DNA of 64,000 nucleotides, taken from the IMG/VR virus record IMGVR_UViG_3300040801_004532, positions 124,001 through 188,000 of that record; one strand, given 5' to 3'. A program made the translations under genes and the position numbers. The notes beneath the pieces were generated by a model, which made no database searches, was not told the origin of the DNA, and saw nothing but the letters and a program-made list of their open reading frames with translations. How positions within the stretch are numbered: the first letter of the stretch is position 1; each line of letters begins with the position of its first letter. Shown piece by piece: positions 23,638-40,258 of this stretch.

Positions 23638-23661
23638 CTATATATATAAATTAGTGATAGG
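23638..23661 (+). promoter_or_regulatory. Putative promoter motif CTATATATATWAAT
   Basis: Same motif at 29044 and 39775, each heading an intergenic gap. Confidence 0.55.
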
Positions 23662-23708: not shown

Positions 23709-24263
23709 ATGTATCAAAAGATCATCGCGATTGTGTTGGCGTTGTTCATCGTGGGCTGCGCAACACAAAAGTACAATGTTGTTGACCCCGCAGGTCGAAA
23801 ATTGCCAAATCCACATTATGTTTTGAATGGTATTGGCAATGACATCTCCGTGATGTTTTACTACATGGAGGTAAGCGAGGTCAGGGATATCGACGGAACC
23901 TCTCTCAAAACCCCATCCTTTATTCCTCTCCATGAAAAGAAAATTTTTACATGGGAAGAGGATCATTCGTTGTTTCTCGTTACAGAGGTTCATAACCCAA
24001 AAAAGGTTAAATACTCTGTATATGAGAAATGGCAAATCAAGTATTGGAGTTTTGATCTGAGGACGGATGGGTTTTATCATAAGATTGCTGAAAGCCAAGC
24101 CCAATTCCGTCGGTATCAAATTCGTCTTCCTTATGTGGAAGATGGAATCAGGGAAGTACGCCATCATCTAGAAATACGTGTTGGTGATGGAGAAATTCCG
24201 TCTATGATGATTGGCGACTTCGTCTATCAAGTCAAAAAGAAAGGGGGTGAACAAACTAATTAA
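23709..24263 (+). CDS. Lipoprotein
   Basis: Signal peptide with lipobox-like IVGC; RBS GAGGTG. Confidence 0.65.
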   Translation: MYQKIIAIVLALFIVGCATQKYNVVDPAGRKLPNPHYVLNGIGNDISVMFYYMEVSEVRDIDGTSLKTPSFIPLHEKKIFTWEEDHSLFLVTEVHNPKKVKYSVYEKWQIKYWSFDLRTDGFYHKIAESQAQFRRYQIRLPYVEDGIREVRHHLEIRVGDGEIPSMMIGDFVYQVKKKGGEQTN

Positions 24264-24282
24264 CATCGAGAGGAGAATGAGT

Positions 24283-24573
24283 ATGAAAAACATCATCATC
24301 GTTTTACTGGCCCTCATGGTGGGCATCGGCACCGCCGGATTCGCTTTTGCGGATGAAGTTCCCGCGACAAACGTGGATCCCGTATTGCTGCAGAATGTGC
24401 CCACGGATGTGGATGATGAAACAGTGGCAAGTCGGTTGATTCATGACCGTGTGCTCCCGGAAGAGGCAAAAATGAATCTGAATCCGGAACCAAGAGCACT
24501 GGATGCCCCGTCCACATCGAAGAGTTCAAGAATCGAAAAACCTGTACGACCAACCAAACCTGCCCCCTGGTAG
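24283..24573 (+). CDS. Exported protein (Sec signal peptide)
   Basis: MKNIIIVLLALMVGIGTAGFAFA-DE; RBS GAGGAG; inside track ORF 24211..24573. Confidence 0.6.
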   Translation: MKNIIIVLLALMVGIGTAGFAFADEVPATNVDPVLLQNVPTDVDDETVASRLIHDRVLPEEAKMNLNPEPRALDAPSTSKSSRIEKPVRPTKPAPW

Positions 24574-24639
24574 TACACAATTGATTGTTTAGCGCTAAAC
24601 AACCAAAACAACAACTTACCAAAACACAAGGAGTTTTCA

Positions 24640-25764
24640 ATGAAGAAAATGTGGAAAGTATTTGCGGTATTTGCGGCAGTCGCCCTGATCAGCACCCCGA
24701 TGGCGTTTGCCGAACCGCCTCACTGGAGCGGCATCATCGGTGGAAATCCCGGAAACTTTGGGGGAAATCCCAACAATGGAAATGCCTTCTGGAAGGGCGG
24801 TCAGGATGAAGGTCCAGGAAATGGCCCCAGCGGTCAGACCGTGGCCTTCGGTGCCCTGGATGTGAAGTCCAAAGCCAAGGCGAAAGCCTTTGATGGTGAC
24901 CTGGAAGTGATCCCCAACGGCGCGGCCTTCGGGATCAGCGGAGCCAAGAGCAAGGCCGGCGCGGATGCCGATGGTTTCGTGCTCAATGGCGAAATCGAAG
25001 GTGAGGTCAATACGACCGCCGGCGCCCTGACCAACACCACGGCCTATACCTGGTTTCCGGGAGCGGGCGACCTCTCCATCGGAGTCGGAAGCTATACCCT
25101 GAATCAGACCTTTCTGGGTGCGGATGCCAAAATCAAGGCAGATCCGGATTTCGGTCTGGCCTTCACCGATGCCGATATGTATGGCAAGACCAGCCAGTTC
25201 TCCCTGAACGCCTCCGGGTTGGGCGAATCCCCGTTCTTCTTCCGTACCGATGGTTTTACCGGTGGTATTGCCACCCAGAATTCCAAGGGCGGATTCCATG
25301 GCGATGCCCATGCGGTAGATTTTATGATGGGAAAATCCGGCGCCGGAATGGGTGCTGAAATCGACATGCTCGGTCAGACCTGGTCCGAATCATATCGCTA
25401 CGTGGACTGGAACAACGGGGCCAGAACTGAAGGAATGGGCACCGTGGTCGGAGCCACCACCGATGTCGAAACCAATGGTTACGACTACGACTGGGATAAG
25501 GGCATTTTCAATTGCACAGACGCCGATGTTCATGGCGGTTTCAATGCCAGCGGCAACGTCGGAGCGATCACCGTCCAGGATACCCGGGGCGGCAAGGGAG
25601 TGGCCACAGCGACCGGGTTGTATGAAGGCGCGGGCCGTCTCGACGACGACTACAGTGGTTCGGCAATCGGCGGCACCTACACCAATATCACCACGGTTGA
25701 TGGCATGAAAGGTTCCGTGGTGAACTCCGGTGCCAACATGACGGTCCATAGTCAGATCGACTAA
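24640..25764 (+). CDS. Exported Gly/Ala/Asp/Thr-rich protein
   Basis: MKKMWKVFAVFAAVALISTPMAFA-E signal; GC-rich codons; RBS AGGAG. Confidence 0.7.
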   Translation: MKKMWKVFAVFAAVALISTPMAFAEPPHWSGIIGGNPGNFGGNPNNGNAFWKGGQDEGPGNGPSGQTVAFGALDVKSKAKAKAFDGDLEVIPNGAAFGISGAKSKAGADADGFVLNGEIEGEVNTTAGALTNTTAYTWFPGAGDLSIGVGSYTLNQTFLGADAKIKADPDFGLAFTDADMYGKTSQFSLNASGLGESPFFFRTDGFTGGIATQNSKGGFHGDAHAVDFMMGKSGAGMGAEIDMLGQTWSESYRYVDWNNGARTEGMGTVVGATTDVETNGYDYDWDKGIFNCTDADVHGGFNASGNVGAITVQDTRGGKGVATATGLYEGAGRLDDDYSGSAIGGTYTNITTVDGMKGSVVNSGANMTVHSQID

Positions 25765-25791
25765 CCGGATCATTTTCAATTCGATTAACCC

Positions 25792-25821
25792 GGGGGCCTG
25801 ATCTTTAGGCCCCCATTTTTT
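25792..25821 (+). terminator. Rho-independent terminator
   Basis: GGGGGCCTG-ATCTT-TAGGCCCCC followed by ATTTTTT. Confidence 0.75.
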
Positions 25822-25855
25822 CAAACCTCAAGATACACGAAGGGAGAAAGTACAA

Positions 25856-26314
25856 ATGAAGAAACTGTTTGCGGTATTGGCGCTCATTCTGTGCGTCGCT
25901 TTTGCCACACCCGCCATGGCTCAGGCCAATGACATCTGTTATGGCGGATGTTATGATGAAACCTACATGGATCAGCAAATGCTCGGACCTTTCAACCTGG
26001 TCGTCACCGGTGTCGAAATTGGCGGGATCGAAATGATCGACAACGACATCCGGGAATACTGCTGTGGATGCAAATACGACTACACCGAGTCCTTTACATG
26101 GGGCGGCCTTTCGGTGGATGTGATCATGCTTCAGGGTGCCGTCATGATGCAGGACATGCATACAACCAGCTGCTGCCCGGCCACCCAGATCCAGGGATAC
26201 GATGTGTCTCAGACCTTTACTTCCCCCGGCTTCACCGTTGAAATGAACGCGGAAGCCTTCCAGGTCCAGCACACCGGGTATTCTTACGGGTATGGAGATT
26301 TCGGCCCCCGGTAA
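25856..26314 (+). CDS. Exported Cys/Met-containing protein
   Basis: MKKLFAVLALILCVAFATPAMA-Q signal. Confidence 0.65.
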   Translation: MKKLFAVLALILCVAFATPAMAQANDICYGGCYDETYMDQQMLGPFNLVVTGVEIGGIEMIDNDIREYCCGCKYDYTESFTWGGLSVDVIMLQGAVMMQDMHTTSCCPATQIQGYDVSQTFTSPGFTVEMNAEAFQVQHTGYSYGYGDFGPR

Positions 26315-26380
26315 CAACAATGTTACTAACATTTTGTATTTTGGTAACAGTTTGAACAACCTACACCAAGGAGAAATTCA

Positions 26381-27301
26381 ATGCGGAAACTTTTCGTGAT
26401 CGCAACAGCAGTAATGTTTCTTTTCGCAATCCCCATGATTGCCCTTGCGGATTCCAACCATGCAACGGCAACCTCGGGTTCCAGTGCCAACGGATACAAC
26501 AACGGCCAAAACCAAGGACAGGATCAGGGTCAAACCCAAATGCAGGGTGTGGGCCTGAACGATGTCGGGAACATCAAAGACTCATTCAACAGCCAAGGCA
26601 TGCGCGGATTCGCCATCCCCGGCGAGATCATGTACGGCCCCTTGCTCAACTACTACCAGCAGGGAACCGCCAGCGGCTCCTTTCAGCGAATCGAAAACCT
26701 CATTCTTTACAGCAACGTGTTCACCGAGGGATCCCTTGAAAGCATCCTTTCCGGGATCGATCATGTGAAAGCTGAAATGAAAGTCGCCGCCGATGTCGCC
26801 CCGGCCAAACCGGCCAAACAGGATGGCGCGACCCGTTTCATCATGGTCGTTGTCACCATGCCGGATCAGTCCGGAAATGTTGCCAAACTGGACAACGTGA
26901 AGTTCAAAGGCTTCGTCAACGCCTGGAGCAGGGACCAGTACACCGCAATGCCTGAAGTCATGGCGGCCGCCGCCCTGGAAGCCCTGAAAGCGGGCTGCAA
27001 TGTGATTCAGTTCACAGCACAGGGCGCCTCCCGAGACACCGTATCCAGTGGATGGGGTGTTGGGATTTCGGCCACTTCCGTGAGCGTTTCTGGTTCTCAG
27101 AGCAGTTCAACCACCGGTACCGCCGGCATCGGTTACTCCGCCGGTCAGGCCGGAATGCGGGACAAACCCTGGCTGCAAGCCTTCGGACTGGTCGCCCCCG
27201 AAATGGATTACCCGGGTGATCTGACCGCCGCTGCAATGCCAGCAGGCAAACCCCAAACCGGTAACCACACCAAGTACGGAAGCGCTCAGGCCAAGAAGTA
27301 A
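26381..27301 (+). CDS. Exported protein with Gln/Gly-rich N-terminus and Ser/Gly-rich beta-hairpin-like segment
   Basis: MRKLFVIATAVMFLFAIPMIALA-D signal; NGQNQGQDQGQTQMQG. Confidence 0.7.
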   Translation: MRKLFVIATAVMFLFAIPMIALADSNHATATSGSSANGYNNGQNQGQDQGQTQMQGVGLNDVGNIKDSFNSQGMRGFAIPGEIMYGPLLNYYQQGTASGSFQRIENLILYSNVFTEGSLESILSGIDHVKAEMKVAADVAPAKPAKQDGATRFIMVVVTMPDQSGNVAKLDNVKFKGFVNAWSRDQYTAMPEVMAAAALEALKAGCNVIQFTAQGASRDTVSSGWGVGISATSVSVSGSQSSSTTGTAGIGYSAGQAGMRDKPWLQAFGLVAPEMDYPGDLTAAAMPAGKPQTGNHTKYGSAQAKK

Positions 27302-27350
27302 TCAACCGGCCTGGTGTTCTTAGATGCCATTCCGGTATCCTAGAACAAAA

Positions 27351-27463
27351 TGAAAATGCTAGTCCCGATTGGGCTAAAGGCCGACGTCCGTGGGCCGCTG
27401 CCGCCCCGAATAAAAGCATCTGCGGCTTTAAGGTAGGGTGAAAGGGTGCTGCTAGCATTTTCA
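27351..27463 (+). ncRNA. Candidate structured small RNA
   Basis: Perfect 12-bp closing stem TGAAAATGCTAG/CTAGCATTTTCA around a GC-rich interior; promoter-like motif at 27341 and terminator directly after. Confidence 0.45.
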
Positions 27464-27519
27464 AATCTGAGGGGGTGGGAAGCACCAGCGCGTCTTCGCG
27501 ACCCCCTCAGATTTTTTTT
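27463..27519 (+). terminator. Rho-independent terminator
   Basis: AAATCTGAGGGGGT...ACCCCCTCAGATTT running into a T8 tract. Confidence 0.75.
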
Positions 27520-27546
27520 GGTTAGAATATATGAAAGGAAATAATT

Positions 27547-28452
27547 ATGAAAATTGAAGACATACAAGTCCTAGTTGTTGGTGATATTATGATGGATAAA
27601 TACGTGGTTGGAAAAGTTGAAAGAATTTCTCCCGAAGCTCCAGTTCCGATTGTTAAAGTTACAGATGAATATGACACACTTGGTGGCTGCGGAAATGTTA
27701 CAAGGAATATTGCTGAGCTTGGAGCTAAAGTTGATTGTCTTGCATCAATTGGTCCGGATGAAGATGGTCTAATTATAAAGGGTGAATTATATGACATCGG
27801 CGCAAGACCACTATTATTTGAAGGTGCTGAAAGGACAATTGTAAAAGAAAGAATAATCTCTGATTATCGAGATGTTCAAATGTTAAGAATTGATCGAGAA
27901 GAAATTAAACCGGTTGATCCAAAATTATCAATTAATATGTTTAAGACAAATAGAAAAGTTGCTTATGATATTGTAATTATTTCTGATTATGCAAAGGGAA
28001 TGATTACTGATGGATTAATGACTTTTTTAAAGAAAGAATTGAAATGTAAAATAATAGTTGATCCAAAACCAATAAACAGACGACTTTATGATAATGTCTT
28101 CATGATTACTCCAAATGAAAAAGAATATATGGAAATGGCAATTCATAGTGACCCAACTCTCAAAAATATTGAATATATATTAAGGACTAGAGGAAAGCAT
28201 GGAATGGTTCTTGAAAGTAAAGGACAAGAATGGAACATTGAAGCTGAACCAGTTGAGGTTTATAATGTTTCTGGGGCCGGAGATACTGTTATTGCTACAA
28301 TGGGAGTTTGTTTATCTCTTGGATTGACTCCTATTCAATCTGCAAAAATTGCAAATAAATGTGCTAATTATGTAGTAACACAACCAGGGACATCGGTGGT
28401 TCCCAAGAACAAATATATGACCATCTTAGATAAGTGTTTATCGGAGGAGTAA
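27547..28452 (+). CDS. rfaE1: D-glycero-beta-D-manno-heptose-7-phosphate kinase (HldE/RfaE domain I)
   Basis: VVGDIMMDKYVVGKVERISPEAPVP, GGCGNV, SDYAKG, VDPK, TPN, NVSGAGDTV. Confidence 0.9.
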   Translation: MKIEDIQVLVVGDIMMDKYVVGKVERISPEAPVPIVKVTDEYDTLGGCGNVTRNIAELGAKVDCLASIGPDEDGLIIKGELYDIGARPLLFEGAERTIVKERIISDYRDVQMLRIDREEIKPVDPKLSINMFKTNRKVAYDIVIISDYAKGMITDGLMTFLKKELKCKIIVDPKPINRRLYDNVFMITPNEKEYMEMAIHSDPTLKNIEYILRTRGKHGMVLESKGQEWNIEAEPVEVYNVSGAGDTVIATMGVCLSLGLTPIQSAKIANKCANYVVTQPGTSVVPKNKYMTILDKCLSEE

Positions 28453-31782: not shown

Positions 31783-34782
31783 ATGAAACTTTTAAATGTT
31801 GAAAGCTTTACAAGGGGGCTAACTCCCGTAACTTCCACTGAATTAAAAACCAGATCTGGAGAACCACATCCAGAAGGATTATTTAGTGAAAAGATTTTTG
31901 GTGTGGAAGGTTCGTTGGACCGAAGCAAACGATATTCTTACATCAATTTAAATTCAAAAATCGTTCATCCTGCAGCATATAAACTCTTGAAACGTATTGA
32001 CTCACGAATTGAAAAATTCCTTAACACAGAGGAAAGTTATTCAGTAGATTCGGAAGGGAAAATGATAGCAGATGATAATGGAGTATCAGGAATTTCAGAG
32101 TTTATCGAAATATTTCCCAAAATAAAATTAAGGGGCGGAACAGCGGCCAGAGATAAGATTAATAAGGTTATAACTGATAGCTACAAAACAGGAACTCTAT
32201 TCATTGATAAACTCCCTGTTGTTCCGCCAGATTTCCGTCCGATGTACACAGACGAGGGAGGTAACTTAATTGTTGATGAACTAAATACATATTATCAAAA
32301 AATAATTAGAAAGGCTGCTCAAGTTAAAAGTGTTGGATCAGGAGGAGCACTTTTTAATCTATTGAATTTTTATTTGCAAATTGCAGTAAATGAACACGAT
32401 GAATATGTAAGGACAAAAATTGCAAAAAAGTCTGGACTAATTCGTTCTAACATGTTAGGAAAACGAGTTGATTTTAGTGCCCGTGGTGTTATTACTCCCG
32501 GACCACAATTAGATGTAAATGAAATAGGCGTTCCACTAAGATCAGCTGTAACTCTTTTTCAACCTTTTCTTATTCATTATTTCTTATTCTCAAAAAAATA
32601 TCCATATAAAGATATACTTGAGGAAGAAGTTAAAAAATTTACAGACTCCGAATTATCAGTTGATACACTTAACCGAGTGATTAAATCAATAAGAGTTGGA
32701 GATAAAGTTCCAGATAGACTTGAAAATTTATTTAAGCAAGCCGCTGAAGTTGTAATGAAGGGACGAGTTGTATTAGCAAAACGAGACCCTGCTCTTCATG
32801 AGGGTTCATACAGAGCTTTTAGACCAGTATTAGTTGATGGGCATACCATTCAAATGTGTACTCTCCAGGTTGGAGGTTTCAATGCGGATTTTGATGGTGA
32901 TATGATGGCATTATATCACCCTCTAACTAAAGAATCACAACAAGAAGCCAAAGAGAGAATGATGCGTGGGGTTGGCAGCAAGAATAGTAGACATGTAACA
33001 TTTGAACTTTCAAAAGAAATGGCTGTTGGACTTTATACTATGACAAAAAATGTTAGACGAGGGTCATCTCCAATTGCAGTTAGTGAGGAGGATCTTGAAA
33101 AAGCCAATGATCCATATATTCCCGTAAAGTATAGAGGAAAAGCTACAACAATGGGGCGAGCGATTTTCAATAGTGTATTTCCAACAAACTTTAGATTTAT
33201 TGATCAATTAGTAACAAAGAAAACAGTGAATAACTTGATACCTGAAATTATTGATCAATATGGCGATGAAGTGGCTGAAAAGGTTTTTTCAAAACTAGAA
33301 AAAATTGGCTTTAAATTTGCAACCATTATTTCTCCCACATTAACACTTGATATGATTGATATGCCTGATAGTATCGAACGAATCAGAGAAAAATTAAAAA
33401 ATTCAAGCCCGGGTGAAGCTGATAAACTACTTCGGGATGGCGAAAAAATAATGATTCAACATTTAAAAGATACTGGTTTATATGATCTCATTGAGTCAGG
33501 AGCAGGAAAGGGATGGGGACAACCAAGACAGATATTAGTTTCAAAGGGTGTAATATCAGATCCAAAAGGAAATGTTCTTCCGCCAATTGAAGGATCATTT
33601 GCTGAGGGTTTGAAAACAACAGAATTTTTTAATGCTGCATCCGGTGCTAGAAAAGGTATGGCGGACCGTGCATTGAATACAGCAGACACTGGTTATTTTA
33701 CAAGACAGCTTGTTTATGTTTTATCCCCAGTTGAAGCAAGCCCAACTATAAGAGATTGTAAAACAAAAAGAACTTTAAATTTAAGATTGACAAATGATCT
33801 AATAGATCGACTATCTGGACGATATATAATCGAGAGAGGAAGAGTTGAAAAATTTTCGTCAAGATATAAGGCTGGGGATACTATTAGATTAAGAACTCCA
33901 ATATTTTGTGAAACAAAAAAGATTTGTCATACCTGTTACGGAGATCTTTTAAAGAGACATAAAAGTCCCTTTGTTGGAATCATTGCTGGAGCATCAATTG
34001 GCGAGCGTGGAACACAGTTAATCATGAGAACATTCCATACTGGTGGTGCTGCAACATTTGCTCAATATGATGTTTTACAAGATATTTTTGACAATGATCC
34101 ATTAATTGAAGTAGACTTGAAGAAATACCTTACTCAATATGAGGATAAACTTATAGCTGCAAAACCATGTAAATTAACAATTGATTTGACCAATTATGAT
34201 ATGAATAATAATATCCAAATTAAAAGAGATTTAGTTTGGGTAAATCATTTGTTATCAAGAATTGAATATGATGATACAATCTTTAACATATCATTAGATT
34301 ATCCCGTTGAATTAACAAGAACTACAATGAATCAGATTGGAAAAGAATATTTAGAGTTTACATTTGCAAAGGATGATATAATGCTTGAAATTCCATTGCA
34401 AACTACAGAAATCAAAGAGCAGGTAAATTATGTTGGCAGGTTGTTGGGAGGAAAGGTTGTTTATAAAGATCCATCCCATTTATTGACAAAGATATTAAAA
34501 ATTTATGGTGGTAAGGTTTCTGATTTGGACCTTGTACATTTTGAGGTCTTGCTTTCACAAGTTTTACGAGATAAAAGAAATGATATGTTGCCAGCTCGAT
34601 TGGGACCAACTTGGGATCCAGTAATGATGAATATTAAAAATGTAGTATTTTCTTCAGGGTTCCTTCAGGGGTTGGCATTTGAAAATGTAAATAAGGCGAT
34701 AGAGACTGGGCTCATTTCAGAAGGAGAGCTTGAACCATCTATTCTCGGAAGGGTGTTGACAGGCGAGGTTATAACAAGATAA
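31783..34782 (+). CDS. rpoC: Phage multisubunit RNA polymerase, beta'-like subunit
   Basis: GLFSEKIFG, LPVVPPDFRP, LGKRVDFSAR.VI, catalytic NADFDGD, TADTGYFTRQL, trigger loop IGERGTQLIMRTFHTGG. Confidence 0.95.
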   Translation: MKLLNVESFTRGLTPVTSTELKTRSGEPHPEGLFSEKIFGVEGSLDRSKRYSYINLNSKIVHPAAYKLLKRIDSRIEKFLNTEESYSVDSEGKMIADDNGVSGISEFIEIFPKIKLRGGTAARDKINKVITDSYKTGTLFIDKLPVVPPDFRPMYTDEGGNLIVDELNTYYQKIIRKAAQVKSVGSGGALFNLLNFYLQIAVNEHDEYVRTKIAKKSGLIRSNMLGKRVDFSARGVITPGPQLDVNEIGVPLRSAVTLFQPFLIHYFLFSKKYPYKDILEEEVKKFTDSELSVDTLNRVIKSIRVGDKVPDRLENLFKQAAEVVMKGRVVLAKRDPALHEGSYRAFRPVLVDGHTIQMCTLQVGGFNADFDGDMMALYHPLTKESQQEAKERMMRGVGSKNSRHVTFELSKEMAVGLYTMTKNVRRGSSPIAVSEEDLEKANDPYIPVKYRGKATTMGRAIFNSVFPTNFRFIDQLVTKKTVNNLIPEIIDQYGDEVAEKVFSKLEKIGFKFATIISPTLTLDMIDMPDSIERIREKLKNSSPGEADKLLRDGEKIMIQHLKDTGLYDLIESGAGKGWGQPRQILVSKGVISDPKGNVLPPIEGSFAEGLKTTEFFNAASGARKGMADRALNTADTGYFTRQLVYVLSPVEASPTIRDCKTKRTLNLRLTNDLIDRLSGRYIIERGRVEKFSSRYKAGDTIRLRTPIFCETKKICHTCYGDLLKRHKSPFVGIIAGASIGERGTQLIMRTFHTGGAATFAQYDVLQDIFDNDPLIEVDLKKYLTQYEDKLIAAKPCKLTIDLTNYDMNNNIQIKRDLVWVNHLLSRIEYDDTIFNISLDYPVELTRTTMNQIGKEYLEFTFAKDDIMLEIPLQTTEIKEQVNYVGRLLGGKVVYKDPSHLLTKILKIYGGKVSDLDLVHFEVLLSQVLRDKRNDMLPARLGPTWDPVMMNIKNVVFSSGFLQGLAFENVNKAIETGLISEGELEPSILGRVLTGEVITR

Positions 34783-34794
34783 CGGAGAATTTGA

Positions 34795-37700
34795 ATGATC
34801 AAATATGACTCATTAATTCAGTACACAAGAGTTGTAGATTCATTAAGGTTTCCTCTAGATCGAGACAAGCCATTTTTAATGGTCTATTTCTCTGAAAACT
34901 CCTTGTTTGCAAAAGATTATCCAAAGCTTAATTTGAGGAGAGTTGATTTTCGGCATGTGATTGTTCCGTTTACAAGATTGCCTGTCACAAGGTTGACTCC
35001 AGAAGTACGCGCAGCTTATAAAGAGTACAACCTTCGTCCATATAGTATGCAAATGAAATTCCCCAGTGATAAAAATCTTATCTTTGATACTACATTTTAT
35101 ACCAACACAGTTGATAAAACATATAAACCAAATACATACAGACAAAGAGCTGGATTCTTAATTCAAAATATTCTTAGTAAATCTTTTCAATCATTTCCTG
35201 ATAATTATAGAAAGATTCTTGCATATGCGGTCGATAAAAACGAGCCTCTCAATACATTTGTAAATAGAAAAATTTTCCCGATTTTAAGACAACTACGTTC
35301 AAAAGAAATTTATTTTGATGATCTTCTTTTGATTGTCATTGGTGATACAGATGCCAGATATAGACTTTTGGTAAAAGATCAAGATTATAAATTTCAACGC
35401 GTGGTTCAGTATGTAAAAACAATAAAGGCTGATGATACAGAAGAAGAAAAAGAACAGGAAGTTATCAATGCAACAATGAAGATAATGAAGCATGTAGGGT
35501 CCGATGTTGCTAAACCAGATACTGTTAAATATGCTGTTAAGGATTATCTTGACAAGAATCCAAGTATGGTTGATAAAATTGCTAATGGTGAATTAAGTAG
35601 CGAAGAGATGGAAAAGCTTACTGCTGCATCAATATTTTTTAGAACAAGTGGGGATTTAAGCAAAGCCAATCGGTTGGCAAAAGCGATACCAGCAGGAAAG
35701 GCAAAGACAGCCGTTCAGAGAATTAGCAGACAATATGAAGATGACCTTCTTAAGAAACAACCATCAGAGAATTTAAGCGACTATATTTATAATCAAACTG
35801 AACCTTTGGCAGAAATGGTTGATAAAAAAACACCTGAGCATATCTTTGATAAACGGAGAATCGACTTTGAAACAAATTTGAAAAAAGATATGTCTAATGC
35901 ATTTAAGGTTCTTGAGAATAGGGATATCCCGTTATCATTTCAGTCAATATCAATTAAACCAAAACCTCAAAAGGCCGGGGAGCTTTCAAAGTCTGATGAA
36001 GCCTTAGTTGAAATCAAACTAAAAGATAAGAGCGGTAGGGTTCACGACGTTCAACTTTCAATCCCTAGAATTGATCCGAATACAGGAACATTCAGGGTTA
36101 ATGGTAAACGAAAATGTATGATCAATCAAATTGTCCTGAATCCAATTAGTTTTCCCAAGGCATATGACTCAAAATTTGAAAGTTCGTATTCAAGTTTTCA
36201 TATTTATAGCAAACGAACCAAAAAATTAAAATACCTTGAAGTGTATATGGGTTCATTTAGGATGCCTCTTATGATCCTACTTTGCTACGCATTTGGTTTT
36301 CAGGAAATCTTGCAGCAATATGGAATAAAAGCACAAATAGTAAAAGAAAAGCCAAATAAAGATAAATATTTTTCAGAAGTTCCTAGTTCATATCTACTTT
36401 TTGAAAATGTTGATACAGAATTAAAAGAAGAATTAGTATCTTCATTTATCCATGCAAAGATTAATCAATATGAAATTGATAAGGAATTTTTATCTAAAAA
36501 ATATTTTAATGATTTGATTATGAAGATGACTGGACGTGTTGATGCTACATACCTAATTTCAAATAACATTGAAAATATAGTTGATCCAATAGTAAGGCAG
36601 GTCTTGATAAACCAACAATTACCATTTGAGTTACCACACATCATTCAATATATGTCAGAAAAGGTTGTAGCTGGTTTTGTTCAAGATAGAAACGATCTGA
36701 CAAATCAACGAATACGAAATTCGGAACTTCTTGTTCATTTGGCTCAAAAGCAATTATTAACAGCATATACTGAATACAGGCAACAATATTTAGCAGGAAA
36801 CAAAGATGCAACATTAAATGTTCCAGAGGGAAAAGTTTTAAGACAATTCGTTGGTCTGGAAATTGTACAAGATATGGAGTATGCGAATCCTGCTGAGGAG
36901 ATGGCTGCTATTACAAAAACGTCTCCGGTAGGTAAAACTGTTGGAGGTATTCCCGATAAACAAGCTGTCCAGTTAGATGCAAGAAATGTTCATACAACAT
37001 ATTTCGGAAATATTGATCCGCTTGATACAGCAGAAGGACCAAACATTGGTATTACCCAACAATTAACTGTTGATGCATATGTCACATCGGCTCGTGGATT
37101 GTTTGGAAGAAAGGCAATGTTGGATTCTGAATCCTCGGGGATTCTTTCAACATCTTCAGCTCTTGTCCCATTTATTGAAAACAATGAAGGTGCAAGAATT
37201 ATCATGTCTTGTAACCAGGTTAAACAGATGTTGCCTTTAAAAAACCCAGAGCCACCAATAGTCCAAACAGGTTATGAGTCATTATTAACAAATGTTCTAT
37301 CTGACAGCTTTGTTAAAAAATCACCATGTAAAGGAAAAATTGATAAAATAACTAATGATTATATTGACATAATTTGTACTGGCAATAAGAAACAGAGAAT
37401 AGATATTTCGCCTGTTCAATTGAAGTCTGGTAGCGGTAAAAACACCTTAAGTACATTCAAACCAATTGTTTCAAAGAATCAGTCTGTTAAAGAAAAGCAG
37501 ATTATTGCTGAGGGGAGTTGTATCTCTGGCGGAACAATTTCAATGGGTAGAAATTTGGCTTGTGCATATATGCCATACAAAGGATATAACTTTGAGGATG
37601 GTTTAGTAATAAATGAAAAATTGGTTAGCCAAAATAAACTAACATCGCTTCATGGTATTGATGTTGAGGCAACAGTCGAAAAAAATGATCGAGTAATTAG

Positions 37701-38880
37701 TATTGTTGAGCTGGGAAAACACACAGAAAAGGGCGACCCACTTTTTAGAAAATTTCCTGGTGATATTGATGAACTATTGGGTTATGACCAAGAAGAGGAT
37801 GAAAGTGTTGATACATATGATGGTCAAATTATTATCAAAAGTCCAGGTGGTCGTGTAGTTGATATTGATGTTTTCTCTAATCTTCCGCCTGATCATTTTC
37901 CAGCATTAAAACCTTTGATTGAAAGAACCAATAAAAAATTCAAAAAGCCAGCAAAAGATAAATTTACAGATAGGGGTATATCAATCAAAGGTATAAAAAT
38001 AGTTTTTAAAGTAGAACAAGAATTGCCAATTGGAATTGGAGATAAACTGTGTAATAGATTTGGTAATAAGGGAATAATTTCTTTAATTGAAAAAGATGAA
38101 TTAATGCCAAGAACTCCTTGGGGTGAAAGGCTTGATATTATTCTTAATCCCCTTGGGGTAATAAGCAGAATGAATATGGGCCAAATTTATGAGTTGTATT
38201 GTGGGTTGATTTCAAGATATGTTGCCAATCAAATTAAACGAGGAGCAAACAAATCTGAAGTAATCTCAATGTTTAGCGCAGTTGTAAAGGGGCTTGACAC
38301 CTCTCCAAATAATAAATTCAGTACAAAATTTTTAGCGAATTTGAAAAAATTAAGTACAGCTCAATATAATAAAATGATTGATCAAATTAAAAATGCAGGA
38401 TATATTCCAATTATTGTACCTCCATTTAAGGCGCCTTCTCACAAACAAATATTGCCCTTACTGAAAAAATTTAATCTGAAAACTGGATATAATTTATCAT
38501 TGCCTGAGTTTAATACAAAAACAAAAAACTCTGTTCCGTTTGGTTATTTGTATATTGCAAAGTTGGAGCATATTGGTAAGGATAAATTACACTCAAGATC
38601 AACCGGACCAACTGTTGGGAAGATATTACAACCAACCGGAGGGAAAAGAAGGGAGGGCGGACAAAGAATGGGAGAAGGTGATACATGGTCATTAGCATCA
38701 TATAATTGTCCACATTTATTATCAGAATTCTTTGGGCCACTATCAGATGACGTGGTAACAAAAAATGAAATCCTTACTGATATAATTCAAACTGGTGAAG
38801 CTGATTTTAGAGCTACAAAATCATCACCAACCAAAGATTTACTAAACGCATATTTCACATCGTTGATGTTGGGGGGATAA
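34795..38880 (+). CDS. rpoB: Phage multisubunit RNA polymerase, beta-like subunit with N-terminal extension
   Basis: GTFRVNG, TAEGPNIG, GYNFEDG, GDKLCNRFGNKG, LNPLGVISRMN, KLEH, GGQRMGEGD. Confidence 0.95.
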   Translation: MIKYDSLIQYTRVVDSLRFPLDRDKPFLMVYFSENSLFAKDYPKLNLRRVDFRHVIVPFTRLPVTRLTPEVRAAYKEYNLRPYSMQMKFPSDKNLIFDTTFYTNTVDKTYKPNTYRQRAGFLIQNILSKSFQSFPDNYRKILAYAVDKNEPLNTFVNRKIFPILRQLRSKEIYFDDLLLIVIGDTDARYRLLVKDQDYKFQRVVQYVKTIKADDTEEEKEQEVINATMKIMKHVGSDVAKPDTVKYAVKDYLDKNPSMVDKIANGELSSEEMEKLTAASIFFRTSGDLSKANRLAKAIPAGKAKTAVQRISRQYEDDLLKKQPSENLSDYIYNQTEPLAEMVDKKTPEHIFDKRRIDFETNLKKDMSNAFKVLENRDIPLSFQSISIKPKPQKAGELSKSDEALVEIKLKDKSGRVHDVQLSIPRIDPNTGTFRVNGKRKCMINQIVLNPISFPKAYDSKFESSYSSFHIYSKRTKKLKYLEVYMGSFRMPLMILLCYAFGFQEILQQYGIKAQIVKEKPNKDKYFSEVPSSYLLFENVDTELKEELVSSFIHAKINQYEIDKEFLSKKYFNDLIMKMTGRVDATYLISNNIENIVDPIVRQVLINQQLPFELPHIIQYMSEKVVAGFVQDRNDLTNQRIRNSELLVHLAQKQLLTAYTEYRQQYLAGNKDATLNVPEGKVLRQFVGLEIVQDMEYANPAEEMAAITKTSPVGKTVGGIPDKQAVQLDARNVHTTYFGNIDPLDTAEGPNIGITQQLTVDAYVTSARGLFGRKAMLDSESSGILSTSSALVPFIENNEGARIIMSCNQVKQMLPLKNPEPPIVQTGYESLLTNVLSDSFVKKSPCKGKIDKITNDYIDIICTGNKKQRIDISPVQLKSGSGKNTLSTFKPIVSKNQSVKEKQIIAEGSCISGGTISMGRNLACAYMPYKGYNFEDGLVINEKLVSQNKLTSLHGIDVEATVEKNDRVISIVELGKHTEKGDPLFRKFPGDIDELLGYDQEEDESVDTYDGQIIIKSPGGRVVDIDVFSNLPPDHFPALKPLIERTNKKFKKPAKDKFTDRGISIKGIKIVFKVEQELPIGIGDKLCNRFGNKGIISLIEKDELMPRTPWGERLDIILNPLGVISRMNMGQIYELYCGLISRYVANQIKRGANKSEVISMFSAVVKGLDTSPNNKFSTKFLANLKKLSTAQYNKMIDQIKNAGYIPIIVPPFKAPSHKQILPLLKKFNLKTGYNLSLPEFNTKTKNSVPFGYLYIAKLEHIGKDKLHSRSTGPTVGKILQPTGGKRREGGQRMGEGDTWSLASYNCPHLLSEFFGPLSDDVVTKNEILTDIIQTGEADFRATKSSPTKDLLNAYFTSLMLGG

Positions 38881-40123: not shown

Positions 40124-40258
40124 AACCTGAAAGACTGTTGGTGGTTCCAGACAAAGAAGCTCGATTGGTTGAGCATTTGCTTAATGTGCAAACGGTTGTG
40201 GGTTCAAGTCCCATCATTGTCACCAAAAGGTGTAAACCACTGTCCTAACTTTCAGGTT
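40124..40258 (+). ncRNA. Y-RNA-like array unit 4 (encloses a full tRNA-like cloverleaf)
   Basis: AACCTGAAAG/CTTTCAGGTT; GGTGGTT/AACCACT; TCCAG. Confidence 0.75.
40150..40225 (+). tRNA. Degenerate tRNA / tRNA mimic, anticodon AAT (nominal Ile), encoded CCA
   Basis: GACAAAG AA GCTC-GATTGGTT-GAGC A TTTGC-TTAATGT-GCAAA CGGTT GTGGG-TTCAAGT-CCCAT CATTGTC ACCA; 76 nt; lacks U8, A14, A21 and has one acceptor mismatch. Confidence 0.6.

What the first reader, a model, noticed from the sequence alone, without database searches (positions are those of the whole stretch)
23709..27301. GC-rich cassette of five consecutive exported proteins
Seen: base composition shifts visibly to GC-rich (C/G-ending codons), most strongly over about 24300-27500. 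All five ORFs begin with signal peptides (one lipoprotein, four Sec-type), with strong RBSs, a phage-type promoter motif and terminators. Products are Gly/Asn/Gln/Ser-rich with no recognisable family. Inference: a host-codon-adapted or recently acquired module that remodels the cell envelope (surface fibre, pore or superinfection exclusion). The 306-aa protein has an amphipathic Ser/Gly hairpin like oligomeric beta-barrel formers.
Basis: partly seen in the sequence, partly recalled or inferred. Interest (0 to 1): 0.6.

Follow-up and report, generated by a model that had tools for sequence, protein, structure and literature searches.

The report
Codon-shifted exported-protein operon of jumbo phage
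A large T4-like phage from a microbial mat carries a conserved five-gene operon for proteins exported to the host cell envelope; its codons fit the host's tRNAs rather than the phage's own, it seems to be transcribed in nature, and its function is unknown.

Summary
Window 23709-27301 holds five consecutive + strand genes: one lipoprotein and four with Sec-type signal peptides. They lie behind a phage promoter motif. A hairpin follows the third gene and a strong terminator the fifth. GC rises from 0.35 to 0.52-0.57 over about 24250-27500, the highest in the 248 kb genome. GC3 is 0.54-0.67 in genes 2-5, against a genome mean of 0.27.

It is neither an assembly chimera nor a recent acquisition. 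The same operon sits at the same place in at least nine independently assembled related phages, always with raised GC3 and the same promoter motif.

The shift is codon-specific. CAG, CTG, ACC, GCC and ATC rise, while GAA and AAA stay. Spacers inside the operon remain AT-rich. The phage carries 28 tRNAs, mostly for A-ending codons. The promoter motif marks other genes with raised GC3, and the major capsid gene has ordinary GC3.

Mat metatranscriptome contigs, 100% identical, lie only on the operon.

No known family fits. The CsgG-like pore idea is not supported. My best reading is an early, host-tRNA-tuned operon that builds an outer-membrane-associated assembly, perhaps for exclusion or envelope protection. 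That function is inferred.

The parts
23638..23657 (+). Phage promoter-like motif CTATATATATAAATTAGTGA, 51 nt upstream of the lipoprotein gene
   Evidence: There are 11 copies of CTATATATAT[AT]AAT[AT]NNTGA in the 248 kb genome, all on the + strand and all upstream of genes. The motif is conserved upstream of the lipoprotein gene in L003, L006, L008, L009 and L013. It resembles predicted promoters of phiKZ-like jumbo phages (PMC7058600).
23709..24263 (+). Gene 1: a 184-aa lipoprotein (lipobox IVGC; mature part about 167 aa). GC3 is 0.43.
   Evidence: Homologues with a lipobox stand in the same module in L003, L008, L009, L013, L014 and L016, and an N-terminally incomplete homologue in L017. No family match; the PHROG 'Rz-like spanin' hit covers only the signal peptide.
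24283..24573 (+). Gene 2: a 96-aa exported protein (AFA|DE) with a Pro/Lys-rich C-terminus. GC3 is 0.54.
   Evidence: Proteins of similar size, position and Pro-rich tail occur in L003, L008 and L009. No sequence family was found.
24640..25764 (+). Gene 3: a 374-aa exported Gly/Ala/Thr/Asp-rich all-beta protein. GC3 is 0.66. It is probably the major component of the assembly.
   Evidence: It has 14 homologues at 34-54% identity, all from metagenomes. The AF2 model has pLDDT 84 and about 14 long antiparallel strands over residues 70-374. Only weak shape matches were found, to large outer-membrane barrels and to the hairpins of giant pores. It is followed by a conserved hairpin.
25792..25824 (+). 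GC-rich hairpin plus T run after gene 3 (a partial terminator or attenuator)
   Evidence: An equivalent hairpin follows the gene-3 homologue in L003, L008 (both paralogues), L009 and L013.
25856..26314 (+). Gene 4: a 152-aa exported protein (AMA|QA) with 8 Cys, one of them in the signal peptide. GC3 is 0.67.
   Evidence: Homologues occur in L008 and L009. It is absent from one relative.
26381..27301 (+). Gene 5: a 306-aa exported protein. In order it has a QGQ-rich linker, an RGFAIPG...NYF motif, an alpha/beta domain, a conserved Gly-rich hairpin (GWGxG...GxGYS...RDKPWLQ), a variable tail and a PQTGNHT end motif. GC3 is 0.66.
   Evidence: A profile search finds 350 cluster representatives at E<=1e-3. 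In the AF2 model the core (106-215) has pLDDT about 90 and the hairpin (220-257) about 53. The nearest folds are FvfA (Z 7.3) and RcsF (Z 6.5).
27350..27462 (+). GC-rich structured element in the 3' untranslated stretch
   Evidence: The fold of 27300-27520 has z = -5.35. There is no Rfam match. A c-di-GMP-I-GGC riboswitch aptamer lies at the equivalent site of L003.
27463..27522 (+). Intrinsic terminator that closes the operon
   Evidence: It has 14-nt perfect arms followed by T8. A terminator follows the gene-5 homologue in all relatives.

Best explanation
This is an old, conserved operon of a clade of T4-like jumbo phages, not foreign DNA.

**Transcription.** It is transcribed from a phage-specific promoter class, probably an early one read by the phage's own multisubunit RNA polymerase. 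An attenuator after the third gene should favour genes 1-3.

**Products.** All five products leave the cytoplasm:
- one outer-membrane lipoprotein
- one abundant Gly/Ala/Thr-rich beta-sheet protein (374 aa)
- one protein (306 aa) with a small periplasmic alpha/beta domain, a conserved amphipathic Gly-rich hairpin and long flexible tails
- two small accessory proteins

**Codon usage.** The high GC is codon selection. The operon uses codons read by host isoacceptors (CAG, CTG, ACC, GCC). The rest of the genome uses the A-ending codons served by the phage's 28 tRNAs. The operon can therefore be translated strongly before, or without, the phage tRNAs.

**Function (inferred).** The proteins assemble at the outer membrane and change the surface or envelope of the infected cell. 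The most likely benefit is to keep out competing phages or to protect the envelope during a long infection.

**Shown:** the anatomy, export signals, synteny, codon pattern, promoter class and presence in RNA libraries.
**Inferred:** early timing, assembly at the outer membrane, and the exclusion or protection role.
For: **Conservation**
- Synteny at the same locus (tail hub, PAAR, cell-wall hydrolase, then the operon, then a heptose kinase, then RNA polymerase) in L003, L008, L009 and L013, and in part in L002, L004-L007 and L010.
- GC3 is raised in the operon in every relative: 0.30-0.62 against 0.1-0.3 in the flanks.

**Codon selection**
- The shift is codon-specific. CAG is 80% against 23%, CTG 47 against 5, ACC 72 against 15, and GCC 59 against 10. 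GAA stays at 85 against 75 and AAA at 59 against 75.
- The same pattern appears in eight relatives.
- The two hairpin-free spacers inside the operon have GC 0.32-0.33.
- The phage has 28 tRNAs, mostly with U34.
- The gp23-like capsid gene has GC3 0.285.

**Promoter class**
- The motif is conserved in relatives.
- Genes within 1.5 kb downstream of the 11 motif sites have a median GC3 of 0.36 against 0.25 (p 7e-6). Without the operon, p is 6e-5.
- The motif resembles predicted promoters of phiKZ-like phages.

**Expression**
- Twelve metatranscriptome contigs at 100% identity all lie within 23966-27278, and none lies on the 2.2 kb of flanks laid with them.

**Evolution and partners**
- The operon proteins evolve faster than the flanks: 25-47% identity against 50-75%.
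- The lipoprotein and the 306-aa family co-occur in eight contexts.
- One relative of the 306-aa protein carries a C-terminal OmpA domain.
Against: - Timing of expression was not measured. The promoter likeness to phiKZ-type promoters is a resemblance to predicted motifs, not a test.
- The RNA evidence consists of contigs from one sample. DNA carry-over or a GC bias of the assembly cannot be excluded.
- No host is known, so 'host-preferred codons' is inferred from the phage's tRNA set and from general tRNA repertoires.
- No homology or fold match ties any of the five proteins to a known exclusion, lysis or fibre protein.
- The 374-aa model may be over-confident for a repetitive sequence with 18 aligned rows.
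- Distant relatives of the 306-aa protein lie in bacterial-looking contigs, so an ancient cellular origin is possible.
Confidence: 0.45

Rival explanations
1. Surface fibre or functional-amyloid-like system. The 374-aa protein is a secreted major subunit. The 306-aa protein, with its Q/N-rich N-terminus and its hairpin, is an outer-membrane anchor, nucleator or channel. The lipoprotein is a helper. The phage would coat or glue the infected cell within the mat.
For: - A hairpin attenuator directly after the presumed major-subunit gene is conserved in all relatives, as in many fibre operons (my own knowledge).
- The 374-aa protein is made of repeated Gly/Ala/Thr-rich strand units.
- Q/N-rich runs occur in the 306-aa family.
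- The Atlas feature search lists HfaD, FapB/C and YadA-stalk clusters at a score of 0.78-0.80. This is a lead only.
- A Gly/Ala/Thr-rich secreted protein stands beside relatives of the 306-aa protein in L016 and L018.
Against: - No member of the 374-aa family matches the curli, Fap or Hfa Pfam families, even at E<=1.
- Atlas scores of 0.8 are reached by shuffled sequences a third of the time.
- CsgG is absent from the fold lists for the 306-aa protein.
- No oligomer support was obtained (one search gave no answer).
Confidence: 0.2
2. Lysis or egress module. The exported proteins break or open the outer membrane at the end of infection, in the role of spanins or of a membrane-disrupting pore, working with the adjacent cell-wall hydrolase.
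For: - The operon always follows a cell-wall hydrolase gene, even where the enzyme type differs: Amidase_2 in most relatives and Peptidase_M15_3 in L008.
- The first gene is a lipoprotein, as o-spanins are.
- The long amphipathic hairpins of the 306-aa and 374-aa models give weak Foldseek matches, with very low TM-scores, to pore-forming toxins and giant pores.
Against: - The hydrolase follows the tail hub and PAAR genes, so it may be a tail lysin rather than the endolysin.
- No holin or inner-membrane-anchored coiled-coil partner lies in the operon.
- The lipoprotein is three times the size of o-spanins, and the PHROG spanin hit covers only its signal peptide.
- The codon usage differs from that of the late capsid gene, and the promoter class is not that of the capsid gene.
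- The T4-like relative L014 carries the module far from any recognised lysis gene.
Confidence: 0.15
3. Horizontally acquired host island (a classical moron), or an assembly chimera, whose GC simply reflects its donor.
For: - It has the highest GC of the genome, its own promoter and terminator, and proteins unlike the rest of the phage.
- Distant relatives of the 306-aa protein lie in bacterial-looking contigs of GC 0.47 and 0.61.
- Other genes with raised GC3 in the genome look like host-derived auxiliary genes.
Against: - The same operon lies in the same place in at least nine independent assemblies from different studies.
- An RNA contig bridges gene 1 into gene 2.
- The promoter is of a phage class and is conserved.
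- Spacers are AT-rich.
- No flanking repeats were found.
- Pattern scans of 185,579 species genomes find no relative of the 306-aa or 374-aa protein.
- The shift is codon-specific, with GAA and AAA kept.
- At 35-50% protein identity between relatives, a passive donor signal should have decayed (inference).
Confidence: 0.05

Closest known systems
T4 superinfection-exclusion proteins Imm and Sp (spackle)
   Same: They are non-virion phage proteins sent to the envelope of the infected cell. They are made early and evolve fast. Sp acts against the tail lysin of incoming phage. Here the operon sits directly after the tail hub, PAAR and cell-wall hydrolase genes. (The T4 biology is from my own knowledge.)
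   Different: There is no sequence or fold similarity. This is five genes, including large beta-rich proteins and a lipoprotein, rather than one small protein. No function has been tested.
Lambdoid morons bor (lipoprotein) and lom (outer-membrane barrel)
   Same: It is a self-contained transcription unit with its own promoter and terminator and a base composition unlike its neighbours. It encodes a lipoprotein and beta-rich envelope proteins.
   Different: It is conserved at one locus across a whole clade instead of being patchy. It is driven by a phage-class promoter rather than a host-type one. The composition shift is codon-specific. The phage is T4-like with no sign of lysogeny in the window.
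Curli (CsgG/E/F/A/B), Fap and holdfast-anchor (Hfa) systems
   Same: All products are Sec-exported. One is a lipoprotein. There are Q/N- or Gly-rich beta proteins. A putative major-subunit gene is followed by a hairpin.
   Different: There is no Pfam match. The hairpin protein is not lipidated. CsgG is not among the fold matches.
RcsF / FvfA / YdgH-YahO-SrfN type small periplasmic alpha/beta domains
   Same: The core domain of the 306-aa protein (residues about 128-273) aligns with FvfA (Z 7.3, rmsd 3.1 A, 95 residues) and RcsF (Z 6.5, rmsd 2.9 A, 79 residues). All of these are envelope proteins of diderm bacteria.
   Different: A Z below 8 is within the range of common arrangements. There is no sequence similarity. 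The long Gly-rich hairpin, the Q-rich linker and the PQTGNHT tail have no counterpart.
Codon-usage partition in tRNA-carrying phages (T4, cyanophages)
   Same: An AT-rich phage with a large tRNA set serves its bulk and late genes, while a minority of genes uses host-type codons. (The general phenomenon is from my own knowledge.)
   Different: The partition is extreme (GC3 0.66 against 0.27). It is concentrated in one exported-protein operon, tied to one promoter motif, and conserved across relatives at 35-50% protein identity.

Membership tests
CsgG-type outer-membrane secretion channel (306-aa protein) | Lipoprotein signal (lipobox Cys) | tested here: not met
   The signal ends ALA|DS, a signal-peptidase-I type with no Cys. 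The same holds in all 31 aligned homologues.
CsgG-type outer-membrane secretion channel (306-aa protein) | Sequence match to the CsgG family (Pfam) or a fold match to solved CsgG | tested here: not met
   Pfam finds nothing. CsgG is absent from the Foldseek PDB list and from the top 50 of the VIA-align wide list. A missing weak match does not prove a different fold.
CsgG-type outer-membrane secretion channel (306-aa protein) | Homo-oligomer whose hairpins form a barrel | tested here: inconclusive
   The job with four copies of residues 100-285 gave 'no answer' with a score of 0.00. This is not evidence either way.
BAM-inserted outer-membrane beta-barrel (374-aa protein) | Signal peptide and an antiparallel beta meander of amphipathic strands | tested here: met
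   The signal ends AFA|EP. The AF2 model has about 14 long strands at pLDDT >90. Nearly all of the nearest shapes are outer-membrane barrels, but weakly so (Z <= 6.8, TM 0.3-0.44).
BAM-inserted outer-membrane beta-barrel (374-aa protein) | C-terminal beta-signal ending in an aromatic residue | tested here: not met
   The protein ends ...MTVHSQID. Of 18 family members only one ends in F.
BAM-inserted outer-membrane beta-barrel (374-aa protein) | Continuous hydrophobic lipid-facing belt, or a match to an outer-membrane-protein Pfam family | tested here: inconclusive
   One strand face is Ala/Gly/Thr/Val-rich, with a mean hydropathy of only +0.28. No Pfam outer-membrane family matches.
Moron (independently transcribed insert of foreign composition) | Own promoter and terminator, and composition unlike the neighbours | tested here: met
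Moron (independently transcribed insert of foreign composition) | Patchy presence: related phages have the flanking genes adjacent, without the insert | tested here: not met
   Every related locus examined carries the operon between the hydrolase gene and the heptose kinase gene.
Spanin pair (o-spanin lipoprotein plus i-spanin) | Small outer-membrane lipoprotein paired with an inner-membrane-anchored coiled-coil protein | tested here: not met
   The mature lipoprotein is about 167 aa. The PHROG 'Rz-like spanin' hit (E 0.007) covers only residues 1-36. The 96-aa neighbour has a cleavable signal and a Pro-rich tail, and no coiled coil is evident by eye.
Curli / Fap functional amyloid subunit (374-aa protein) | Match to the Curlin_rpt or FapBC family | tested here: not met
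   None of the 18 family members matches at E<=1. There is only a weak Atlas feature lead of 0.78.
Superinfection-exclusion proteins (functional class) | Blocks entry of a second phage when expressed | not testable with these tools
   This needs an isolated host and phage, or heterologous expression with challenge phages.

The most novel reading that the evidence does not exclude
The lipoprotein, the Gly/Ala/Thr-rich beta-sheet protein and the hairpin protein may be the parts of a so far undescribed outer-membrane machine, either a fibre or a large pore. Some bacteria and many large phages would share it. The hairpin family alone has 350 cluster representatives and no Pfam family. Jumbo phages would deploy it early, from a promoter read by their own polymerase, with codons tuned to host tRNAs so that it is made before the phage's translation takeover.
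Probability: 0.2. Interest if true: 0.8.

Novelty: new variant of a known kind. Interest (0 to 1): 0.55.

Why it matters
- **Unknown envelope proteins.** Large phages are known to act on the host envelope through a few small proteins. A conserved five-gene exported operon that seems to be strongly transcribed in nature points to a much larger, unknown envelope function. It defines at least three uncharacterised protein families that can now be expressed and tested.
- **Codon selection inside one genome.** A GC-rich island in a phage is usually read as foreign DNA. Here the spacers, the conserved synteny and the parallel choice of codons argue for selection to use host tRNAs. The case links promoter class, tRNA carriage and codon use within a single genome.
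- **Timing of expression.** If the early timing is confirmed, GC3 could be used to predict temporal gene classes in uncultivated jumbo phages.

Tried and rejected
**Searches that found nothing useful**
- A blastn of the region and a tblastn of the conserved 479-aa neighbour against 50,697 phage records found no match.
- Pattern scans of 185,579 species genomes found no relative of the 306-aa or the 374-aa family. The first try with the wide alignment failed for lack of conserved columns. These scans need conserved 7-10-residue words, so distant bacterial relatives escape them, as L017 and L018 show.
- Profile searches of the PDB sequences matched only signal peptides.
- The word search for the lipoprotein found only one relative.
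- The first paper search gave nothing specific.

**Fold searches**
- For the 306-aa model, Foldseek against PDB and BFVD gave nothing at E<=0.001.
- The Atlas look-up for the 306-aa protein was uninformative.

**Complex prediction**
- Complex prediction with four copies of residues 100-285 of the 306-aa protein gave 'no answer'. I do not use it either way.

**RNA families**
- Rfam gave no family for the structured 3' element of the window, nor for the long GC-rich leader of L009.

**Ideas considered and dropped**
- Stop-codon recoding, because of the tRNA with anticodon CUA. The standard code already gives 86% coverage by ORFs of 100 aa or more.
- A T4 late promoter. TATAAATA is not enriched and is absent upstream of the capsid gene.
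- Flanking attachment-site-like repeats. None were found.
- The antisense ORFs inside the island (224 aa and 184 aa). I treat them as shadows of GC-rich coding sequence.

**Operators' limits**
- The reads call used 5,501 letters, within the stated limit.

Full report
**Where the window lies**

The window is bases 124001-188000 of a single 248,136-bp virus record, estimated 79% complete, with GC 0.352. The phage is T4-like and large.
- It has a gp23-type major capsid gene.
- It has genes for UvsX, topoisomerase II, ribonucleotide reductase and SbcC-like proteins.
- It has a gp5-like hub and a PAAR protein just upstream of the finding.
- About 4 kb downstream lie two large genes whose homologues in the relatives match the RNA polymerase beta' and beta families.
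- It has 28 tRNA genes, mostly with U at the wobble position, one tRNA with anticodon CUA, and a tmRNA.
- The standard genetic code fits.

Five + strand genes fill 23709-27301.
- GC rises to 0.47-0.63 in 200-nt windows from about 24250 to 27500. This is the highest stretch of the whole genome, at 0.571 per kb against a mean of 0.352 with sd 0.04.
- The rise is mainly at third codon positions. GC3 is 0.54, 0.66, 0.67 and 0.66 for genes 2-5 and 0.43 for gene 1, against 0.27 ± 0.10 for 193 long ORFs.
- All five products start with an export signal: a lipobox in gene 1 and AxA-type cleavage sites in the other four.
- A crude script flags only 13 of 326 ORFs in the genome, so five in a row is far from chance.
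- Each gene has a Shine-Dalgarno sequence.

**Operon anatomy**

- A 20-nt motif, CTATATATATAAATTAGTGA, lies 51 nt upstream of gene 1 at 23638-23657.
- Its core pattern occurs 11 times in the genome, always on the + strand and upstream of a gene.
- A GC-rich hairpin with a T run follows gene 3 at 25792-25814.
- A strong terminator follows gene 5 at 27463-27514, preceded by a 113-nt GC-rich structured stretch.
- The same layout appears in every related locus where those parts were captured: motif, lipoprotein, small Pro-rich protein, large Gly-rich protein, hairpin, Cys-rich protein, hairpin-bearing protein, terminator.

**Not a chimera and not a recent arrival**

*Synteny.*
- Homologues of the 306-aa and 374-aa proteins exist only in metagenome data, at 34-54% identity.
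- Their contigs show the operon in one fixed place: after the tail hub, PAAR and cell-wall hydrolase genes, and before a PfkB-type kinase and the RNA polymerase genes.
- These are independent assemblies from several studies.
- In L008 the hydrolase is a Peptidase_M15_3 instead of an Amidase_2 and the large Gly-rich gene is duplicated, yet the operon is there.

*Reads and repeats.*
- A transcriptome contig spans 23966-24307, from gene 1 into gene 2.
- There are no flanking repeats.

*Rate of change.*
- The flanking proteins are 50-75% identical between relatives and the operon proteins 25-47%, so the operon evolves faster.

**The GC rise is codon selection**

Four results point the same way.
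1. The shift is codon-specific.
   - Rising codons (cassette against bulk): CAG 80% against 23%, CTG 47 against 5, ACC 72 against 15, GCC 59 against 10, ATC 79 against 17.
   - GAA is 85 against 75, AAA is 59 against 75, and GAT and CAT remain the majority codons.
   - A plain drift to GC would move all of them.
2. The same pattern recurs in all eight related loci. This includes L013, where overall GC3 is barely raised but CAG is 0.60 against 0.11 and GCC 0.43 against 0.00.
3. The two hairpin-free spacers between the genes (after genes 2 and 4) have GC 0.32-0.33, like the rest of the phage.
4. The bulk genes use the A-ending codons that match the phage's own U34 tRNAs. The operon prefers codons that need other isoacceptors. 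GAA and AAA are also the codons best read in bacteria that have only one tRNA for Glu and for Lys (my own knowledge; inference).

The major capsid gene, surely highly expressed late, has GC3 0.285. High expression alone is therefore not the cause.

**Link to a promoter class**

- Genes within 1.5 kb downstream of the 11 motif sites have a median GC3 of 0.36 against 0.25 elsewhere (Mann-Whitney p 7e-6). Without this operon, p is 6e-5.
- Those genes encode small, membrane-anchored or zinc-finger proteins rather than structural or replication proteins.
- The capsid gene has no such motif.
- The motif (…CATTTAAA…TATATTAATTAGTGA) resembles the promoters predicted for phiKZ-like jumbo phages, TATATTAC…GTG (PMC7058600, table 2). 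I recall that phiKZ-type promoters of this kind are early promoters read by the virion polymerase. This is a lead, not a test.
- Together this suggests a temporal class that is translated with host tRNAs, most simply early genes.

**Expression in nature**

- Two metatranscriptome runs of one microbial-mat sample hold 12 contigs identical to the window. All lie within 23966-27278. None lies on the 2.2 kb of flanks laid with them.
- Under even coverage the chance of that is about 0.002 (my arithmetic: 0.6 to the power 12).
- Caveats: these are contigs, from one sample. DNA carry-over or GC bias is possible.
- Two DNA runs hold relatives that match the flanks at 90-99% but not the operon. This fits its faster divergence.

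**What the proteins look like**

None matches Pfam, PHROGs or NCBIfam beyond signal peptides.

*The 306-aa family.*
- A profile search finds 350 cluster representatives at E<=1e-3.
- Its parts are a Q/N/G-rich linker, an RGFAIPG…NYFG motif, an alpha/beta domain, a Gly-rich amphipathic hairpin (GWGIG…GGxGYS…RDKPWLQ), and a variable tail that ends in PQTGNHT in this clade.
- The AF2 model is confident for the domain and poor for the hairpin.
- The nearest solved folds are small envelope proteins: FvfA at Z 7.3 and RcsF at Z 6.5. CsgG is not listed.
- One relative ends in an OmpA domain.

*Where relatives of the 306-aa protein lie.*
- L013, a syntenic jumbo phage.
- L014, a T4-like phage with gp32 and RNase H.
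- Two bacterial-looking contigs. In L017 the gene sits near a YkuD L,D-transpeptidase. L018 has GC 0.61.
- The lipoprotein family travels with the 306-aa family in eight contexts.

*The 374-aa protein.*
- It models confidently as about 14 long antiparallel strands.
- It has only weak likeness to large outer-membrane barrels and to the hairpins of giant pores.
- It lacks the aromatic C-terminal signal of barrel proteins.
- Its less polar strand face is mostly Ala, Gly and Thr.

**Most likely working**

- I take the operon to be an early, host-tRNA-tuned unit whose products assemble at the outer membrane of the infected cell.
- The attenuator after gene 3 implies more of genes 1-3 than of genes 4-5.
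- Three features suit a function in phage-phage competition or envelope protection, as T4 Imm and Sp provide in a much simpler form: fast evolution, the position beside the tail lysin, and the inferred early timing. This step is inferred.
- A surface fibre system and a lysis or egress module are the live rivals.
- Recent transfer or chimerism is largely excluded.

**Verdict**

The feature is real and conserved, and its composition is explained better by selection than by foreign origin. The protein families are uncharacterised, and the function is open.

Noticed in passing
L003:10970-11043: A c-di-GMP-I-GGC riboswitch aptamer (RF03167, 67.9 bits against a gathering score of 59), followed by a terminator. 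It lies between the operon's last gene and the PfkB kinase gene of a related phage.
   Followed up: partly
window 27350-27462: A GC-rich structured RNA-like element (the fold of 27300-27520 has z -5.35), nested inside what looks like the ancestral terminator stem. It sits at the same site as the L003 riboswitch and has no Rfam match. It could be an unclassified aptamer.
   Followed up: partly
window 27547-28452: The PfkB gene next to the operon is close to the RfaE domain I heptose-7-phosphate kinase (TIGR02198, E 1.6e-76, below the equivalog cut-off). This is an LPS or glycan heptose pathway gene on a phage.
   Followed up: partly
genome 53.8-82.8 kb (outside the window) and window 40150-40225: An array of 28 tRNA genes, a tRNA with anticodon CUA (which ARAGORN calls Pyl), and a tmRNA with tag ADDYYTEVALAA. 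One further tRNA-Ile (AAU) lies in the window. ORF statistics give no sign of stop-codon recoding.
   Followed up: partly
genome 91277-92030, 49158-50043, 26979-27485 and 28175-28571 (all outside the window): Other genes behind the same promoter motif have raised GC3 (0.47-0.68). One is a membrane-anchored 171-aa protein with GC3 0.68, and another is a DnaJ-like Cys-rich zinc-finger protein with GC3 0.61.
   Followed up: partly
genome 17-23 kb (outside the window): A second, weaker GC-rich stretch (GC 0.44-0.49, GC3 0.41-0.57). By eye its genes look like an SPFH/band-7-like protein, an isochorismatase-like protein and a vWA-like protein. They may be host-derived auxiliary genes.
   Followed up: no
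L008:2157-6207: In this relative a Peptidase_M15_3 hydrolase replaces the Amidase_2 before the operon. The large Gly-rich gene is present twice (347 aa each), with different GC3 (0.36 and 0.21).
   Followed up: no
L017:5212-7618: A distant relative of the 306-aa protein and a lipoprotein-family gene lie about 350 nt downstream of a YkuD L,D-transpeptidase gene in a bacterial-looking contig. Many C-termini in the clade are Lys-rich, and one relative carries an OmpA domain. Together these hint at tethering to peptidoglycan.
   Followed up: no
L009:459-728: A 270-nt leader with a GC-rich structured-looking part lies between the promoter motif and the lipoprotein gene of this relative. It has no Rfam match.
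   Followed up: partly
window 31783-38880: Two large adjacent genes (999 and 1361 aa) whose homologues in the relatives match the RNA polymerase beta' and beta families. They are unsplit, unlike those of phiKZ-type phages, and sit in a T4-like genome.
   Followed up: no
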